From Octopus sinensis (Eukaryota), in NCBI RefSeq assembly GCF_006345805.1, contig NC_043003.1:8308001-8372000 (forward strand): 64,000 bases of DNA, written 5' to 3'. Under the pieces are notes generated by a model. The model worked only from the letters and a program-made list of their open reading frames with translations, had not been told where the DNA came from and searched no databases. Made by a program: the position numbers and the translations under genes. This document shows positions 847 to 63,824 of this stretch, in pieces. Positions within the stretch are counted from its first letter, which is position 1; each line of letters begins with the position of its first letter.

Positions 847-882
847 CTTTCTGTCGAAGAGCGAAGGCTCGAAATGTAAAAG
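847..882 (+). ncRNA. Degenerate minimal hammerhead ribozyme motif (family J)
   Basis: CTTT-CTGTCGA-A-GAGC-GAAG-GCTC-GAAA-T-GTA-AAAG. Stems I and II pair, but the core has two changes from CUGACGA/GAAAC. A similar decayed motif lies at 9395-9430 on the minus strand. Confidence 0.45.
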
Positions 883-3800
883 ACTTTCTCACTTCCCGAG
901 CGTTAAAATATTACATCTGTTTGTTGTTTACACACTCGTCTTCGCCATTTGGTGTTTTTTTTGTAAATTCTATCTCTCTTTCTCTTTCTCTCTCTCTCTC
1001 TCTCTCTATATATATATATATATATATATATATATATGTTTGAAGTCTCCTATAAAGTCCCTGACTGTCAGCTACTTTTAAAAATCAATGTGTTCAAACA
1101 CCGCCAAAGTGAAAAAAAGAATCCCATTGAACATTTTGGAATCGATAAATAAATCGCAGCCAAGTTCTGTAATCGATTAACTAGATTACAGCTTTCCCCA
1201 AAAGATGCCTGATAATGAGCCAAGGTTATCAATCAGTATCAACATCGATGAACAGGCGGTAACAATTACGGTGTGCAAGACTAAACAGCTTAATAGTTGG
1301 TATTTCTTATTTCAGAATGTATGGAAATGCTTAGAGTAGTGGTTACGATCGCAAGATTGTGGTTTTTATTCCTGAGAATGGGCGGTAAGTTTCTTTCTTT
1401 CTTTCTTTCTTTTTTTTAGAAAAAAACACTTCATCTTGTTGCTCTCGTCTAGCAATAATTAGGTTTCCCGATCGGGTGAGGGAGCCTTTCAATCTCAGTC
1501 ACTTATACGCGATCGAATCCACGTAAAGCTCCATTCGTTTGGGCACTAGTGATCATGAAAAATTTATCTATGTATGTCATTGTTCAGTTTTATTTCAAGA
1601 TTTCTTGCCAATAGAGATAGAGAGAAAATGCCTGTTTCTAACCTGGATCCAAAGTTCCTTCATTGGAATTTCAACATCAACAACAGGGTATTATGTATGT
1701 ATGTATGCAACTCACAACGTATTACTACGTTTATATTCAAGTCTTATTCAAGCCATTACTTTGCCTCAGTAGAATAAGAACTGCTTATATCTCAACAAAT
1801 AACTAGACAACTCTTCAAAAATTTGCTAGGCGTTTATATAAGATATGAAATGCATTATAAGATAATTAAGTGTGGCATGTGAGCAATGCATTTGTAATAA
1901 TGTACGCTTAACTAGAAATAGTTCTCAAGAGTTTTGAGAAACTGAACTATATTATATATTTGACTTTCAGTGTATAATAATTAAAATTTTCGGCTGTAAT
2001 CTAAAATTGAATCTGAATAGATCTACAGATCCAAATTTGTAGTATGAATCATATTTGGCGTAAGTCGACGTCGTTACGAATATATACATATATATATTAT
2101 ATATATATATATACATATGAGAGAACAAAGTATATATATATATATATATATATATACACACACACACACACCACACACACATATATATATATATATATAT
2201 ATATTATATATATATGTCTATATGTATGTATATGTATATATATATGTATATATAATATATATATATATATATATATATATATACACACATACAGACACAT
2301 ATATATATATACATGCATGCATATATATGTGTGCGAGTTCGTGTTTGTCTGTGCAGATTTATTTATCATTCATGATGTAACAATTCACAGTAACATTGCG
2401 AAGTTCGAAAAAAAATTGATTAAATCTATGCGCCAGTGTTTAATGAAACTCTATGCAATCTTCTGCGCCGATCTTACTGGAAGTATGTTTATACAAGACA
2501 CAAATGTGAATTTATTCAAAATTTATTCATACCTAATCTGTCTCATTGCTGTAGCTATTTCATAAATGCTGTCAGTGAATGTAACAATATGCAAATAAGT
2601 AATTTAAGGAGCGGAAGGTGAATATAGTGTTAACAATTAACCCATCGCTCATGTGTATAAATGTTGGTTGCCTTCTTGTCGTGGTTAAATCTACCACCAT
2701 TGTTAAATCCAATTTCGTTCCGATCATTTGTGTATCTTGAACAACAATGCCTACTGAGCGGCCATGTTGAAAATTATTTGTCGCATAGATTTTAAAATAT
2801 TAATGCATTATGAGTGTTCGAAATATTCAAATCTATGAGGTATGTCATTCAGCCACAAGCAAAATAAAGGGGCCTTAGTTCAAGCCACGGCCTACCAGTT
2901 CCACGACTTGAGGTCAAGAGTTATATTTTTGAAATTCTAATATCTGTCACTCGGAAAACACGAAAGCGTTATTTCTGCTTTAAACCAATATTATTGTCGT
3001 CTGCAAAGGTATATAATTAAGTTTTCATTTGTTGTGTTGAAAAATTCCTTTCCGATCACTCTGTGACTATAGGGCGCCATCCATTCACCGTTCTGTAACA
3101 ATTCTGTTGTGATTTGCTTTACTGTTGTGACTGAACTTTTGCTTATCAACCACCTACATGCTGTTATTTACACCCATATTTATTTGATGAGACCCATCAT
3201 AGCCTTAGATAATCTTCGTCTTAATTGCCTGTTATCTATTGGCAACTAAAATCGCCAAAACGGACTTGAGAACTATGACACTGACAGCAGCGTTCAATGA
3301 GAAAAGAAGACTCGTATTTCCTTCAAGAGTACCAAAATACAAACTCAGCACAAATTAAACAGCAGCCCACATTCGCCAAGAAATAACATCTCGTTATGAC
3401 CAATTTCATCCACTCGATTCACTGGCAAACATCCTCCAACGTGCCACAAGCGGTTTGTAAACCGACGAGTTGTATCTTCAACCAACGCCACAAGAAGAAA
3501 GGAAATGGAATTACGATTCTCTTACACCTACATTCACCCGATTTACACTTCCTGCTAGCAATGTCCTTTGAGTGTGAACCACAAAATACTGCTGTAAAAA
3601 TTCATGCAAATAGTTTTATAAAGACTGCAACTGCCTAGAACTTCGTTTCCCATATTTATTTTGTCTAAAAGTATGAAACTTTAGAAACTTTTGCCAAACA
3701 TCAACTCCATTCATTGAAGTAGGTCATGCGCACGGCCAATCTTCCCCAGACTAAAATGTAGAGAAATATATTTAATGAGATAGAATTGTTACAATAGTGA

Positions 3801-4664
3801 ATGGCTGTTCTTGGATGTAGGCGGTGCCAGACAGAAATTTAAACTCTATGAAATGAACTGTTAATGTGAATTTATTATGCCTTGAGGAATACGATAGCAT
3901 AAAATTCCGAAATCACTCTCAAGAACTACCTTAAACTTCTATACTGTTCGCTTACTCAGACGTATACAGAACTGTGGTATATTGCATGAATAACTTCACA
4001 AATTCTTAAACTTGTCTAAACGTCAATATTCCAGCTTCTTGTGTAAAAAAAATAAATTCATTCCAACAACAATATCAACAATTTACAAAATCAAACAAAC
4101 GATACTATGATTATCTCGCCCGTACCACTCACAATATTAAAATTTAATGCTTCTTTTCTGCGTTAATTGTTAGAGCAACAGAGAACATTACAGCACTAAT
4201 GGAATACAAGATTTAACCTCATAAAAAAAAAACCGCCACCGTTAGCAACACCACCTACTGGAAATATTAGCGAGATCGTTTTTTATTCGAAATAACACAC
4301 CAGCGTTTTAAGAAAATAATGATACATTATAACTTTGTTCAAAATATTAAGTCTGAGTAAAAATCGGTGCATAGAATGCGTGATGCCAAACGTTAGGTAG
4401 TCGTTTAGTTTGACCAAGGAACAAATTCGTGTGTAGCGAATAGCGAATCGGCCTATGAAAAAGGTATGCGAATCGTTTATGCTCGGAACTATTCCCAAGA
4501 AGAGATGGTTGACTGATGTTGTACGTTTTAGAATGATAGAAATTGACCTGAGACCCACCGATGCAATATCTAATGCTGCCCGATCTACCATACACAGCAT
4601 GAAATTGGGATTATTGTGACGTGATCTACTGGAGATATCACCAATTTGTGCGTCTCTGACTCAC

Positions 4665-4733
4665 CTCCCGACGTCATCTATCAACCAATTGACGAGCACC
4701 TTTGTCAAAATCTTCAGCCATTCAATTATGGAG
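4665..4733 (-). other. Candidate 69-nt exon
   Basis: Minus strand TTTCAG acceptor and GTGAGT donor with one open frame (SIIEWLKILTKVLVNWLIDDVG). No protein family recognised; may be non-coding. Confidence 0.25.
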
Positions 4734-63180: not shown

Positions 63181-63382
63181 TTTAAATATTTATGTAATTA
63201 GATATAGACTAATATTGATATTAGAATATTGGTTTTCTACCTTATAAATTAAAGTTAATATTTAACATTATAGTCGATTTCGATATAATCATATTTAATA
63301 ATAGAGTTTATTATTAGTAAAATTATTATATTATATATATTATTTATATCTTTAAAATATTGATTATATTTTAGATATTTAA

Positions 63383-63447
63383 ACCACCTGATGAATGACT
63401 GCGACTCAAAAATTTGAAGACAGCAGGCATGAAACGATCGTAGTATG
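63383..63447 (+). ncRNA. Hammerhead ribozyme with decayed stem I (family I)
   Basis: ACCAC-CTGATGA-ATG[CTGC/GCAG, TCAA/TTGA]CAT-GAAAC-GATC-GTA^GTATG. Core and stems II/III are intact; stem I has only 2 bp. Confidence 0.55.
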
Positions 63448-63824
63448 ATATTAATTATATTTTTTAATAATTTTGTTATATATTTAAATAATATAAATTA
63501 ATCATATGTATTGGCTTAAGTTTTTCATTGTTTGATTTGCCTAATAGTGGTTTTGTTTCTAATTTAATATAATATATATATATATATATATATATATATA
63601 TAATCAAAATAAGCAACAAGGGTATCCATAGGTAATGCAGTACGATCGTTTCATGCGACTCTGGATATCTTTGTTGCTTATTTCGATTGTAATCACCCAA
63701 TTTTGAATTATATGGATAATACCATACTAAATTCTGGTGCCTTTAACTTAAGTACCATATTTAACTGAATCTAAATTTTACTGAACTTATATATATATGT
63801 GTGTGTGTGTGTGTGTGTGTGTGG

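What the first reader, a model, noticed from the sequence alone, without database searches (positions are those of the whole stretch)
847..63790. Dense, diverse population of hammerhead-ribozyme retroelements targeting (TA)n tracts (retrozyme-like system)
Seen in sequence: at least nine sequence-unrelated families (A-I) carry the full type I hammerhead layout (stem I, CUGANGA, stem II, GAAA, stem III, NUH, stem I). Six (B-G) occur as 1.1-2.5 head-to-tail units of 430, 480, about 495, 497, 537 and 558 bp with no long or recognisable ORF, and end in TA-rich microsatellite; four of these six have a 5-prime inversion. Established: Penelope-like elements carry hammerheads in their pseudo-LTRs, and non-coding retrozymes spread through self-cleaved and circular RNAs. 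Inference: tandem units with no ORF between them suggest the unit itself is the replicon (a cleaved or circular monomer copied past one full turn), mobilised in trans by Penelope RT/GIY-YIG, remnants of which are in this window. About one ribozyme family per 7 kb would mean a very large genomic load. I cannot confirm whether these families are already described.
Basis: partly seen in the sequence, partly recalled or inferred. Interest (0 to 1): 0.93.

Follow-up and report, generated by a model that had tools for sequence, protein, structure and literature searches.

The report
Octopus hammerhead retrozymes in (TA)n tracts
This stretch of octopus DNA is crowded with short non-coding mobile elements that each carry a hammerhead self-cleaving RNA motif and sit inside TA microsatellites; they are new examples of an already described class (animal "retrozymes", non-autonomous relatives of Penelope-like retrotransposons), not a new kind of system.

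Summary
The window is octopod DNA. Six non-coding units of 430, 480, 495, 497, 537 and 558 bp lie as 1.15-2.4 head-to-tail copies inside (TA)n tracts, and four have an inverted, 5'-truncated second arm. Eight families have an intact CUGANGA...GAAA...UH core in type I order. Four pass a relaxed descriptor that hits 0.02 times per shuffled window. The others have an irregular helix II or, at 63388, almost no helix I. The motif at 847 has a non-canonical core. No Rfam hammerhead model reaches threshold. Units fold far better than shuffles, with z of about -3 to -8 against about 0 for controls. Partial tandems, an inverted arm with both 3' ends outward and a microsatellite target are the published insertion signature of Penelope-like elements. 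ORF-less tandem type I hammerhead units are the published metazoan non-LTR retrozymes. These are therefore new members of a known kind. I found no Penelope RT or GIY-YIG remnant in the window; the RT remnant is LINE-type. Self-cleavage and circular RNA remain untested.

The parts
21083..22507 (+). 558-bp family, twin-arm insertion in (TA)n. The inverted arm is 21083-21165, a 100% reverse complement of 21450-21532. The direct arm is 21166-22507 (2.40 units) and starts inside hammerhead helix II. Full hammerheads lie at 21700-21757 and 22258-22315 (UGAG/CUCA helix I, CUGAUGA, 25-nt helix II, GAA, palindromic ACGUACGU helix III, H17=U).
26131..26626 (+). 430-bp family, single arm, 1.15 units, flanked by (CATA/TA)n and (TA)n. 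There is one hammerhead at 26490-26562, with a 7-bp helix I, an irregular 42-nt helix II and a palindromic ACCGGU helix III. The element's 5' end lies +2 to +5 nt from the predicted cleavage site (26555/26556).
38386..40558 (-). 480-bp family, minus arm. In sense order it holds unit positions 1-208, then a 1.72-kb internal segment (38630-40348) with a frameshifted gag-like ORF (RRM-like part plus CCHC knuckle) flanked by a 23-bp direct repeat, then unit positions 186-444 with the hammerhead at 38566-38519. Its 3' end abuts (TA)n at 38385.
40560..41129 (+). 480-bp family, plus arm: 1.19 ORF-less units. It starts at the same unit nucleotide as the minus arm, 3 nt across the palindrome centre. 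The hammerhead is at 40809-40856 (7-bp helix I AGGCCUG/CAGGCCU, U.U-closed 3-bp helix II with GUAA loop, 4-bp helix III, H17=A). The 3' end abuts (TA)n.
41268..42458 (-). 495/497-bp family, minus arm, 2.41 units. Hammerhead cores are at 41492 and 41987, both with small indels relative to the plus-arm copy. Predicted cleavage sites lie after 42387, 41895 and 41398. The 5' end falls inside helix II and the 3' end abuts (TA)n at 41267.
42459..42962 (+). 495-bp family, plus (inverted) arm, 1.02 units. The hammerhead is at 42632-42735 (7-8 bp helix I, 67-nt helix II with a 19-bp hairpin, helix III ACGGUGCAUCGU). Its 3' end abuts the 1-kb (TA)n at 42963, about 100 nt further along the unit than the minus arm's 3' end.
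50291..50995 (+). 537-bp family, single arm, 1.31 units, inside a (CATA/TA)n tract whose CATA variant occurs on both sides. There is one hammerhead at 50762-50839 (CUGAAGA core). The element's 5' end is 5 nt upstream of the predicted cleavage site (50832/50833).
51980..52902 (-). Long non-coding relative of the 54446/63601 family. Helix I, the CUGAUGA core (52016) and helix II are present, then the element is cut off by (TA)n before GAAA. It is 84.6% identical over 937 bp to Octopus sinensis L001 4374-5298, where the copy continues through GAAACGGUCGUA to a (TA)n.
53062..53797 (-). 497-bp family (62-72% identical to the 480 family), twin-arm insertion. The minus arm is 53062-53728 (1.34 units) with the hammerhead at 53367-53300. 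The short plus arm is 53729-53797. Both 3' ends abut (TA)n, at the positions homologous to the two 3' ends of the 480 family.
54446..54752 (.). Twin-arm palindromic insertion of a further family. The minus arm is 54446-54634 and the plus arm 54635-54752. Both are 5'-truncated in or near the hammerhead core. The 3' half GAAACGAUUGUA is kept in one arm and reads AAAA in the other. It is flanked by TA-type repeats.
58254..58327 (+). Single hammerhead at 58254-58297 (helix I 9 of 10 pairs, 2-bp helix II with GCAA loop, 3-bp helix III). It is followed 30 nt later by (TA)n. The 5' limit of the element was not determined.
63381..63567 (+). Hammerhead-like motif with an intact core, a good helix II and a palindromic ACGAUCGU helix III, but only 2 bp of helix I, so probably defective. 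The element ends at (TA)n at 63568.
63601..63790 (.). Twin-arm insertion of the 54446 family (80-87% identity). The minus arm is 63601-63657 and holds the hammerhead 3' half GAAACGAUCGUA/CUGCAUU. The plus arm is 63658-63790. Both 3' ends abut microsatellite.
555..985 (+). The core reads CUGUCGA (A6 changed to U), helix II is GAGC-GAAG-GCUC and helix III has a 2-nt loop. This is not a canonical hammerhead, and membership of the population is not shown.

Best explanation
The window holds at least twelve independent insertions of about eight families of short non-coding retroelements (units of 0.43-0.56 kb; one form is at least 1.1 kb). Each unit carries one type I hammerhead ribozyme, about 135-200 nt upstream of the nearer of two usual 3' end positions. 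They are non-autonomous derivatives of Penelope-like elements, that is, metazoan 'non-LTR retrozymes', in an octopus genome.

Proposed mechanism, with each step marked.
1. (Inferred) A genomic copy holding more than one unit is transcribed.
2. (Inferred from motifs) The hammerheads cut the transcript into unit-length, highly self-paired RNAs. Families whose helix III is a 1-3 bp stem forming a palindromic stretch (ACGUACGU, ACCGGU, ACGAUCGU) would have to pair two ribozyme copies to cleave, as published for PLE-type minimal hammerheads.
3. (Inferred from the insertion signature) A PLE reverse transcriptase/GIY-YIG endonuclease supplied in trans nicks a (TA)n tract.
4. (Shown as a pattern, mechanism inferred) The target 3'-OH pairs with UA-rich patches in the 3' part of the RNA. 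As a result, 3' ends fall at different unit positions but always at TA-like microhomology.
5. (Shown: products longer than one unit) cDNA synthesis runs over more than one unit. A multimeric transcript, a circular monomer or end-to-end template jumping would each do this, and the DNA cannot tell them apart.
6. (Shown as architecture, mechanism inferred) In half of the events the second target strand primes a second cDNA. This gives an inverted 5'-truncated arm with both 3' ends facing outward.
For: - Hammerhead layout far above chance: (6 hits against 0.02 per shuffle; 0 for scrambled cores). CTGANGA is in two-fold excess.
- Between the related 480 and 497 families, five of the first six helix I pairs differ on both sides and all still pair.
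- Three families have a perfectly palindromic helix III stretch, the hallmark of PLE-type minimal hammerheads.
- The Rfam HH9 alignment, though sub-threshold, recovers the same three helices for the 480 family.
- Exact partial tandems of 1.15-2.4 units with no ORF between units.
- Six twin-arm insertions with outward 3' ends.
- All 16 arm 3' ends abut TA microsatellite, which covers about 6% of the window.
- The 537 insertion has the same CATA variant of the microsatellite on both sides. This favours insertion into an existing tract.
- Both single-arm insertions start within 5 nt of the predicted cleavage site.
- Units fold much better than shuffles (z -6.25 and -5.0 by the tool; about -3 to -8 as circles), while ten control stretches give z -1.3 to +1.4.
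- One family recurs at two loci here and in Octopus sinensis, again at a (TA)n.
- Literature: PLE insertions are partial tandems with an inverted 5'-truncated copy, microsatellite bias and hammerheads in the pseudo-LTR (PMC8557442). ORF-less tandem type I hammerhead repeats are non-LTR retrozymes (PMC7229834) and derive from PLE pseudo-LTRs (bioRxiv 10.64898/2026.07.22.740005). Octopus vulgaris has 31 PLE families (PMC13282606).
Against: - No Rfam hammerhead model reaches its gathering score.
- None of the eight ribozymes has the usual G10.1-C11.1 pair, and six have a mismatch there, so catalytic competence is unproven.
- Only the 558 and 495 insertions hold two or more hammerheads on one strand. 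The other loci would be dead ends for a retrozyme cycle.
- No PLE RT or GIY-YIG sequence is in the window, so the trans-acting partner is inferred from architecture and literature only.
- The 5' ends of twin-arm insertions do not coincide with cleavage sites.
- The 537 copy starts 5 nt upstream of the cut, which a cleaved 5' end does not explain simply.
- Units of 480-558 bp exceed the 150-450 bp quoted for animal retrozymes.
- Palindromic and tandem PLE insertions are known to be error-prone in assemblies.
Confidence: 0.8

Rival explanations
1. The units are not independently propagating retrozymes. They are by-products of ORF-bearing Penelope-like elements: pseudo-LTR fragments or internally deleted copies made during reverse transcription of longer elements, each a dead-on-arrival product.
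For: - In the 480 family, one arm of the same insertion holds a 1.72-kb gag-like internal segment exactly where the ORF-less arm has a junction. A 23-bp direct repeat flanks the segment and could mediate template switching or deletion.
- Most loci carry only one hammerhead per strand.
- The 54446 family has a form of at least 1.1 kb.
- Partial tandems are normal for autonomous PLEs (PMC8557442).
Against: - The 558 and 495 families show 2.4 consecutive units with no internal segment, so their template lacked any ORF.
- Six different families show ORF-less head-to-tail junctions.
- The long 480 form has no RT or EN either, so it is itself non-autonomous.
- The strong predicted self-pairing of whole units is expected for retrozyme RNAs.
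Confidence: 0.2
2. Local satellite-type amplification: a PLE terminus landed once, and the tandem copies arose by unequal crossing-over or replication slippage at the DNA level, without RNA intermediates.
For: This model is discussed for retrozyme arrays in bioRxiv 10.64898/2026.07.22.740005. Tandem units are 92-99% identical.
Against: - Copy numbers are fractional and small (1.15-2.4).
- Arrays end at specific TA-microhomology positions on both sides.
- Inverted arms with outward 3' ends are not produced by unequal crossing-over.
- The same architecture recurs in eight unrelated families and at two loci of one family.
Confidence: 0.05
3. The elements are SINE-like passengers of a LINE, not of a PLE, and the (TA)n flanks are element-borne tails rather than targets.
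For: The only RT remnants in the window are LINE-type. Some non-LTR elements end in simple repeats.
Against: - There is no sequence similarity between the unit 3' ends and the LINE 3' ends in the window.
- Single-arm insertions have microsatellite on the 5' side too, with the same CATA variant on both sides for the 537 family.
- Tandem plus inverted-arm products and hammerheads are PLE traits, not LINE/SINE traits (PMC8557442).
Confidence: 0.04
4. The hammerhead matches are chance, or are decayed and no longer functional motifs inside foldback or palindromic DNA repeats.
For: Rfam finds nothing at threshold. Helix II is irregular in several motifs, and the 10.1-11.1 pair is non-canonical in all of them.
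Against: - Shuffles and scrambled cores give essentially no hits.
- The motif sits at the same relative place in unrelated units.
- Helix I co-varies between related families.
- Palindromic helix III stretches occur in three families.
Confidence: 0.03

Closest known systems
Metazoan non-LTR retrozymes (Cervera & de la Pena 2020, PMC7229834; Li, Clavereau & Pollet 2026, bioRxiv 10.64898/2026.07.22.740005)
   Same: ORF-less AT-rich units (GC 0.33-0.39) in head-to-tail copies. There is one type I hammerhead per unit and strongly self-paired predicted RNA. They co-occur with PLEs in the host lineage. A U.U mismatch at the base of helix II, as in the 480 family, is described for axolotl HHR_Amex2.
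   Different: Units are larger (430-558 bp against about 150-450 bp). Copy number per locus is only 1.15-2.4, not long arrays. Every insertion is in a (TA)n tract, and half have an inverted second arm. Those papers, as far as I searched them, mention no microsatellite target or inverted arm for retrozymes. No expression or circular RNA data exist here.
Penelope-like elements (Penelope/Poseidon, Neptune, Hydra clades) and their pseudo-LTR hammerheads (Craig et al. 2021, PMC8557442, and Cervera & de la Pena 2014 as cited there)
   Same: Partial tandems and an inverted 5'-truncated copy with outward 3' ends. One arm extends further 3' than the other (the published 'tail'). There is microsatellite insertion bias, including (TA)n. 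Some families have minimal type I hammerheads with a short palindromic helix III.
   Different: There is no RT/GIY-YIG ORF in any copy or anywhere in the window. The extension between the two 3' end positions is about 85-140 nt rather than 30-40 bp. Several hammerheads have a stable 3-5 bp helix III.
Plant LTR retrozymes (Cervera et al. 2016, PMC4918200)
   Same: Non-autonomous retroelements whose transcripts are thought to be cut by their own hammerheads into structured RNAs and mobilised in trans.
   Different: The plant elements have type III hammerheads in true LTRs, a PBS/PPT, 4-bp TSDs, GC above 55% and Gypsy machinery. None of these applies here.
Newt satellite 2 hammerhead repeats (as described in PMC7229834) and the Schistosoma Sm-alpha and cricket hammerhead repeats (from my own knowledge of the literature)
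   Same: Type I hammerheads in short non-coding repeats. A weak helix III requires two copies for cleavage.
   Different: Those are long satellite arrays or SINE-like dispersed copies. They lack the (TA)n-specific twin-arm architecture seen here.

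Membership tests
Hammerhead ribozyme, type I | Conserved core C3U4G5A6N7G8A9 ... G12A13A14 ... U16.1 H17, in the order helix I strand, core, helix II hairpin, GAAA, helix III hairpin, UH, helix I strand | tested here: met
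   Eight families have the intact core in type I order. The motif at 847 fails (CUGUCGA).
Hammerhead ribozyme, type I | Three base-paired helices closing the core, more often than chance | tested here: met
   Relaxed descriptor: 6 hits in 4 families against 0.02 per shuffle and 0 with scrambled cores. Helix II is irregular in 430, 497 and 58261. Helix I is only 2 bp at 63388.
Hammerhead ribozyme, type I | Match to the curated Rfam covariance models (Hammerhead_1, HH9, HH10) at gathering score | tested here: not met
   There are no hits at gathering and none at E<=10 in 38390-42960 or 21660-21800. HH9 scores 17.4 bits against a cutoff of 52 for 40807-40864.
Hammerhead ribozyme, type I | Canonical G10.1-C11.1 pair at the base of helix II | tested here: not met
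   0 of 8 have it. Six have a mismatch (A.A, A.C or U.U) and two have U-A or A-U.
Hammerhead ribozyme, type I | Site-specific self-cleavage after H17 | not testable with these tools
   There is only an indirect hint: the two single-arm insertions start within 5 nt of the predicted cut.
Metazoan non-LTR retrozyme | Tandem repeat in which consecutive units each carry a type I hammerhead (at least two per locus) | tested here: inconclusive
   This is met at the 558 locus (2 full copies) and the 495 locus (2 on the minus strand, with small indels). Other loci have one hammerhead per strand.
Metazoan non-LTR retrozyme | No protein-coding capacity; no LTR, PBS or PPT; low GC | tested here: met
   No Pfam match to the unit ORFs. 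The longest sense ORFs are 65-67 aa and have no homologue. GC is 0.33-0.39. The exception is the 1.72-kb gag-like segment in one arm of the 480 family.
Metazoan non-LTR retrozyme | Unit size about 150-450 bp | tested here: not met
   Units are 430, 480, 495, 497, 537 and 558 bp. Only the 430-bp unit is inside the quoted range.
Metazoan non-LTR retrozyme | Highly self-paired monomer RNA | tested here: met
   z is -6.25 and -5.0 and -3.1 to -8.2 when folded as circles. Controls give -1.3 to +1.4.
Metazoan non-LTR retrozyme | Expression as unit-length linear and circular RNA | not testable with these tools
   No transcript data are available.
Penelope-like element (autonomous) | ORF encoding PLE-type RT plus GIY-YIG endonuclease | tested here: not met
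   Of 146 ORFs of 75 aa or more, one hits RVT_1 and none hits GIY-YIG. The RVT_1 hit cannot be assigned to a specific ORF from that output. The only RT-like ORFs and motifs found are LINE-type. A GIY-YIG regular expression finds nothing. Remnants shorter than 75 aa could be missed.
Penelope-like element (insertion signature) | Partial tandems (pseudo-LTR), an adjacent inverted 5'-truncated copy, a one-sided 3' extension and microsatellite target bias | tested here: met
   There are six twin-arm insertions with outward 3' ends and unequal 3' end positions, and all ends lie in (TA)n. The features are as defined in PMC8557442.

The most novel reading that the evidence does not exclude
These octopus elements form a (TA)n-specific guild of retrozymes whose insertions preserve readable footprints of the mechanism. 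The 3' ends are set by pairing of the nicked (TA)n with UA-rich patches of the RNA. The 5' ends of single-arm copies are set by hammerhead cleavage in vivo. Twin arms come from priming on both target strands. If this holds genome-wide, it would be direct genomic evidence that PLE machinery mobilises ribozyme-processed non-coding RNAs. It would also make the still unknown PLE integration mechanism testable from insertion junctions alone.
Probability: 0.3. Interest if true: 0.6.

Novelty: new member of a known kind. Interest (0 to 1): 0.4.

Why it matters
The link between animal retrozymes and Penelope-like elements has so far rested on co-occurrence and on sequence similarity of the termini. 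Here ORF-less hammerhead units show the full PLE insertion signature: partial tandem, inverted arm and a (TA)n target. That supports the view that PLE enzymes, rather than local satellite expansion, put them there. For octopus genomics, it shows that part of the 'unknown' or 'simple-repeat-associated' fraction is made of many small ribozyme-bearing families nested in TA microsatellites. It is not a new kind of system.

Tried and rejected
- Rfam at gathering score and at E<=10, on the whole window and on three sub-regions. The whole-window permissive list was swamped by microsatellite 'miRNA' noise. There was only one sub-threshold HH9 hit.
- A descriptor allowing one core mismatch. It found no extra families, so the motif at 847 gains no support.
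- MFE folding of isolated ribozymes. The hammerhead junction is only partly recovered, so this is not informative.
- A search for Penelope coding remnants with YxDD, GIY-YIG and RT motif expressions and Pfam on 146 ORFs. Only LINE-type RT turned up.
- Homologues of the gag-like ORF. The word-indexed search found none. The exhaustive phmmer search found 184, but the longer ones carry no RT or EN, so the class of the long 480 form stays open.
- A homologue search with the 66-aa sense ORF of the 495 unit, to fish out other copies. It found nothing.
- An exact-pattern scan of metagenome contigs with the 480-family ribozyme. It found nothing.
- Four loci fetched through LINE homologues. Only L001 (Octopus sinensis) is octopus-like. 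L002-L004 shared nothing with the window.
- The shared motif TTGCATTCG. It has 4 hits against 0.5 expected, but three are from the related 480/497 families, so I did not pursue it.
- tRNA scan: none found.
- I did not build a covariance model. Helix II varies from 10 to 67 nt, and no eukaryotic collection was available to search.

Full report
SOURCE AND SETTING. The window is AT-rich (GC 0.23-0.42) eukaryotic DNA with about 26 TA-type microsatellites. A LINE-type reverse-transcriptase ORF (61447-61824, minus strand) has its best database match in Octopus sinensis (68% identity). Many of the window's dispersed repeats recur in a 20.5-kb O. sinensis contig fetched as L001. The host is therefore an octopod.

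ASSEMBLY GAP. The gap at 56721-56820 was checked. Unique sequence lies to its left. To its right begins the left terminal inverted repeat of a 372-bp TIR element (56822-56935 against 57078-57193, 94.9%). No hammerhead element, tandem unit or reading frame of the finding touches the gap. Continuity across it is unknown and irrelevant here.

IS THE HAMMERHEAD LAYOUT REAL? Rfam gives nothing at gathering score. The permissive whole-window scan is swamped by microsatellite 'miRNA' hits. Sub-region scans give only a sub-threshold Hammerhead_HH9 hit for 40807-40864 (17.4 bits against a cutoff of 52), whose alignment nevertheless recovers helices I, II and III as I assign them.

My own descriptor scans are clearer.
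- CTGANGA occurs 36 times against 18.3 expected.
- A strict type I descriptor finds 4 cores against 0 in 100 dinucleotide-preserving shuffles.
- A relaxed descriptor finds 6 cores in 4 families against 0.02 per shuffle, and 0 with six scrambled cores.

Reading every core in context gives eight families with an intact CUGANGA...GAAA...UH core in type I order.
- The 558, 480, 495 and 537 families are clean.
- The 430 and 497 families and the motif at 58261 have an irregular or very short helix II.
- The motif at 63388 has only 2 bp of helix I.
- Three families have a perfectly palindromic helix III stretch (ACGUACGU, ACCGGU, ACGAUCGU). This is the mark of the minimal hammerheads of Penelope-like elements, which cleave as dimers.
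- Between the related 480 and 497 families, five of the first six helix I pairs differ on both sides and all still pair.
- None of the eight has the canonical G10.1-C11.1 pair and six have a mismatch there. This explains the low Rfam scores and leaves catalytic competence unproven.

A one-mismatch descriptor adds nothing.

ARCHITECTURE.

| Family | Coordinates | Units |
|---|---|---|
| 558 bp | 21166-22507 | 2.40 |
| 495/497 bp | 41268-42458 (minus arm) | 2.41 |
| 495 bp | 42459-42962 (plus arm) | 1.02 |
| 480 bp | 40560-41129 | 1.19 |
| 430 bp | 26131-26626 | 1.15 |
| 537 bp | 50291-50995 | 1.31 |
| 497 bp | 53062-53728 | 1.34 |

The 558, 480, 495 and 497 insertions have an inverted, 5'-truncated second arm. 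So do two insertions of a further family (54446-54752 and 63601-63790). In every twin-arm case the two 3' ends face outward.

All 16 arm 3' ends abut TA-type microsatellite, which covers about 6% of the window. The 537 insertion has the same CATA variant of the repeat on both sides. This argues for insertion into an existing tract rather than an element-borne tail.

The two arms of one insertion end at different unit positions, always where the unit reads TA-like. One site lies about 135-200 nt and the other about 235-340 nt 3' of the predicted cleavage site. The homologous 480 and 497 families use homologous pairs of sites.

The two single-arm insertions begin +2 to +5 nt (430 family) and -5 nt (537 family) from the predicted cut. 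By chance this would be about 5e-4, but it is a post hoc observation on two cases. The 5' ends of twin-arm insertions do not coincide with cleavage sites, although four lie inside the ribozyme.

CODING CAPACITY. No ORF of 75 aa or more in the units has a Pfam match. The longest sense ORFs are 65-67 aa and have no homologues.

The exception is the minus arm of the 480 family. It carries 1.72 kb (38630-40348) between unit positions 208 and 186, flanked by a 23-bp direct repeat. This segment encodes a frameshifted gag-like protein, with a weak zf-CCHC hit, 184 remote homologues, and no RT or endonuclease domain on the longer homologues. The 480-bp unit is therefore the two ends of a 2.2-kb ORF1-only form. 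This fits the published idea that retrozymes derive from PLE termini.

Pfam on the 146 ORFs gave one RVT_1 hit and no GIY-YIG hit, and that output does not say which ORF matched. The only RT-like sequence I could locate (61112-63189, minus strand) has the LINE motifs YLDFSKAFD and FADD and a typical LINE ORF2 linker. Nothing resembles GIY-YIG.

RNA PROPERTIES. Whole units are predicted to fold far better than dinucleotide shuffles. The tool gives z -6.25 and -5.0. Folding five units as circles gives -3.1 to -8.2. Ten unrelated 500-nt stretches of the window give -1.3 to +1.4. Strong self-pairing is a described property of retrozyme RNAs (PMC7229834).

COMPARISON WITH WHAT IS KNOWN. Craig et al. 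2021 (PMC8557442) describe PLE insertions as 5'-truncated partial tandems (pseudo-LTRs). These often have an adjacent inverted 5'-truncated copy, a one-sided 30-40 bp 'tail', a microsatellite bias that includes (TA)n, and hammerheads in the pseudo-LTR. Cervera and de la Pena 2020 (PMC7229834) define metazoan non-LTR retrozymes as AT-rich, ORF-less tandem repeats of about 150-450 bp with a type I hammerhead in each unit. These are expressed as self-paired linear and circular RNAs, and the axolotl ribozyme described there has a U.U pair at the base of helix II. Li et al. 2026 (bioRxiv 10.64898/2026.07.22.740005) show that retrozymes are phylogenetically nested among PLE pseudo-LTRs, and favour local amplification for array growth. 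Octopus vulgaris has 31 annotated PLE families (PMC13282606); that paper mentions neither hammerheads nor retrozymes.

The elements here work like, and fit best as, non-LTR retrozymes, that is, non-autonomous PLE derivatives. They differ in three ways: larger units, very low copy number per locus, and an explicit PLE-style twin-arm, (TA)n-specific insertion signature. I did not find that signature described for retrozymes in the passages I searched in those papers.

MECHANISM.
- Shown: the motifs, the fractional tandems, the outward-facing arms, the TA flanks, the variable 3' ends at TA microhomology, and the predicted RNA structure.
- Inferred: transcription of multi-unit copies, and hammerhead cleavage (as dimers for the palindromic helix III families). 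Also inferred are nicking of (TA)n by a PLE endonuclease supplied in trans, priming by pairing of the target with UA-rich patches, cDNA synthesis over more than one unit, and a second priming event that yields the inverted arm.
- The DNA cannot distinguish a circular monomer from a multimeric transcript or from end-to-end template jumping.

GENERALITY. One family recurs at two loci here, in a longer form at 51980-52902, and in O. sinensis L001 at 4216-5298, again ending at a (TA)n. These families are therefore dispersed and shared among octopuses. However, L001 has no intact hammerhead in 20.5 kb, so the density in this window (most insertions lie between 38 and 64 kb) should not be extrapolated to the genome.

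VERDICT. Interest is moderate (0.4). It rests mainly on the clean insertion footprints that tie ORF-less hammerhead units to PLE-type integration.

Noticed in passing
38630-40348 (minus strand): A 1.72-kb segment inside one arm of the 480-bp family. It encodes a frameshifted gag-like protein (RRM-like region plus CCHC knuckle) and is flanked by a 23-bp direct repeat (GATGTTGATCAGTTAGCTGATCG). A consensus 5' splice site (AGGTAAGT, about 38786-38779) and a possible acceptor near 38647 suggest a retained intron, a trait reported for PLEs. There are 184 remote homologues, none with RT or EN.
   Followed up: partly
hammerheads at 21707, 26497, 40816, 42639, 50769, 53359(-), 58261, 63388: None of the eight ribozymes has the usual G10.1-C11.1 pair. 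Five have A at 10.1 opposite A or C, and one has U.U. This looks like a lineage-wide peculiarity. It probably explains the failure of the Rfam models and raises the question of activity.
   Followed up: partly
51980-52902 (minus strand); L001 4216-5298: A non-coding element of at least 1.1 kb, related to the 54446/63601 family. Its hammerhead is cut off by (TA)n before GAAA in the window. The O. sinensis copy (84.6% over 937 bp) continues through the 3' half but has a mutated core (CUGAAAU).
   Followed up: partly
21166, 42458, 54634, 63657: Four arm 5' ends lie inside the ribozyme (helix II or the core). In the 495 family the end sits at the foot of a 19-bp hairpin. This may reflect reverse transcriptase stalling or template switching at stable structure.
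   Followed up: no
56822-57193: A 372-bp element with terminal inverted repeats of about 115 bp (94.9% identity) lies immediately right of the assembly gap. It is probably a MITE or non-autonomous DNA transposon.
   Followed up: no
60866-63189 (minus strand); 24100-24700 (minus strand); about 3007 (minus strand): LINE remnants: RT motifs YLDFSKAFD and FADD, an ORF2 linker and a C-terminal region. They are 73-85% identical to copies in O. sinensis L001. The CTGATGA at 24699 lies within this coding remnant and is a chance match.
   Followed up: partly
12181-12647; 22614-23053 (inverted); 26650-27056: A dispersed repeat of about 430 bp sits next to microsatellites and next to the 558 and 430 insertions. 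It has a conserved CTGATGA (12400, 26833, 22871-) but no GAAA/UH partner in any hammerhead topology.
   Followed up: partly
10495-10825; 16813-17397; 28103-28540; 44284-48824: A SINE-like repeat of about 168 bp, present in more than 15 dispersed and locally tandem copies (75-93% identity) and also in O. sinensis L001 14348-14968. ARAGORN finds no tRNA-like head.
   Followed up: no
5832-6256; 34080-34212; 15424-15653: Minisatellites with units of 43 bp (9.9 copies), 30 bp (4.4 copies, 99% identity) and 76 bp (3 copies).
   Followed up: no
48827-49175; 13427-13623: Two further long palindromes (87% and 83% arm identity) are centred on TA-rich sequence. They have no hammerhead core and could be twin-arm insertions of ribozyme-less elements.
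   Followed up: no
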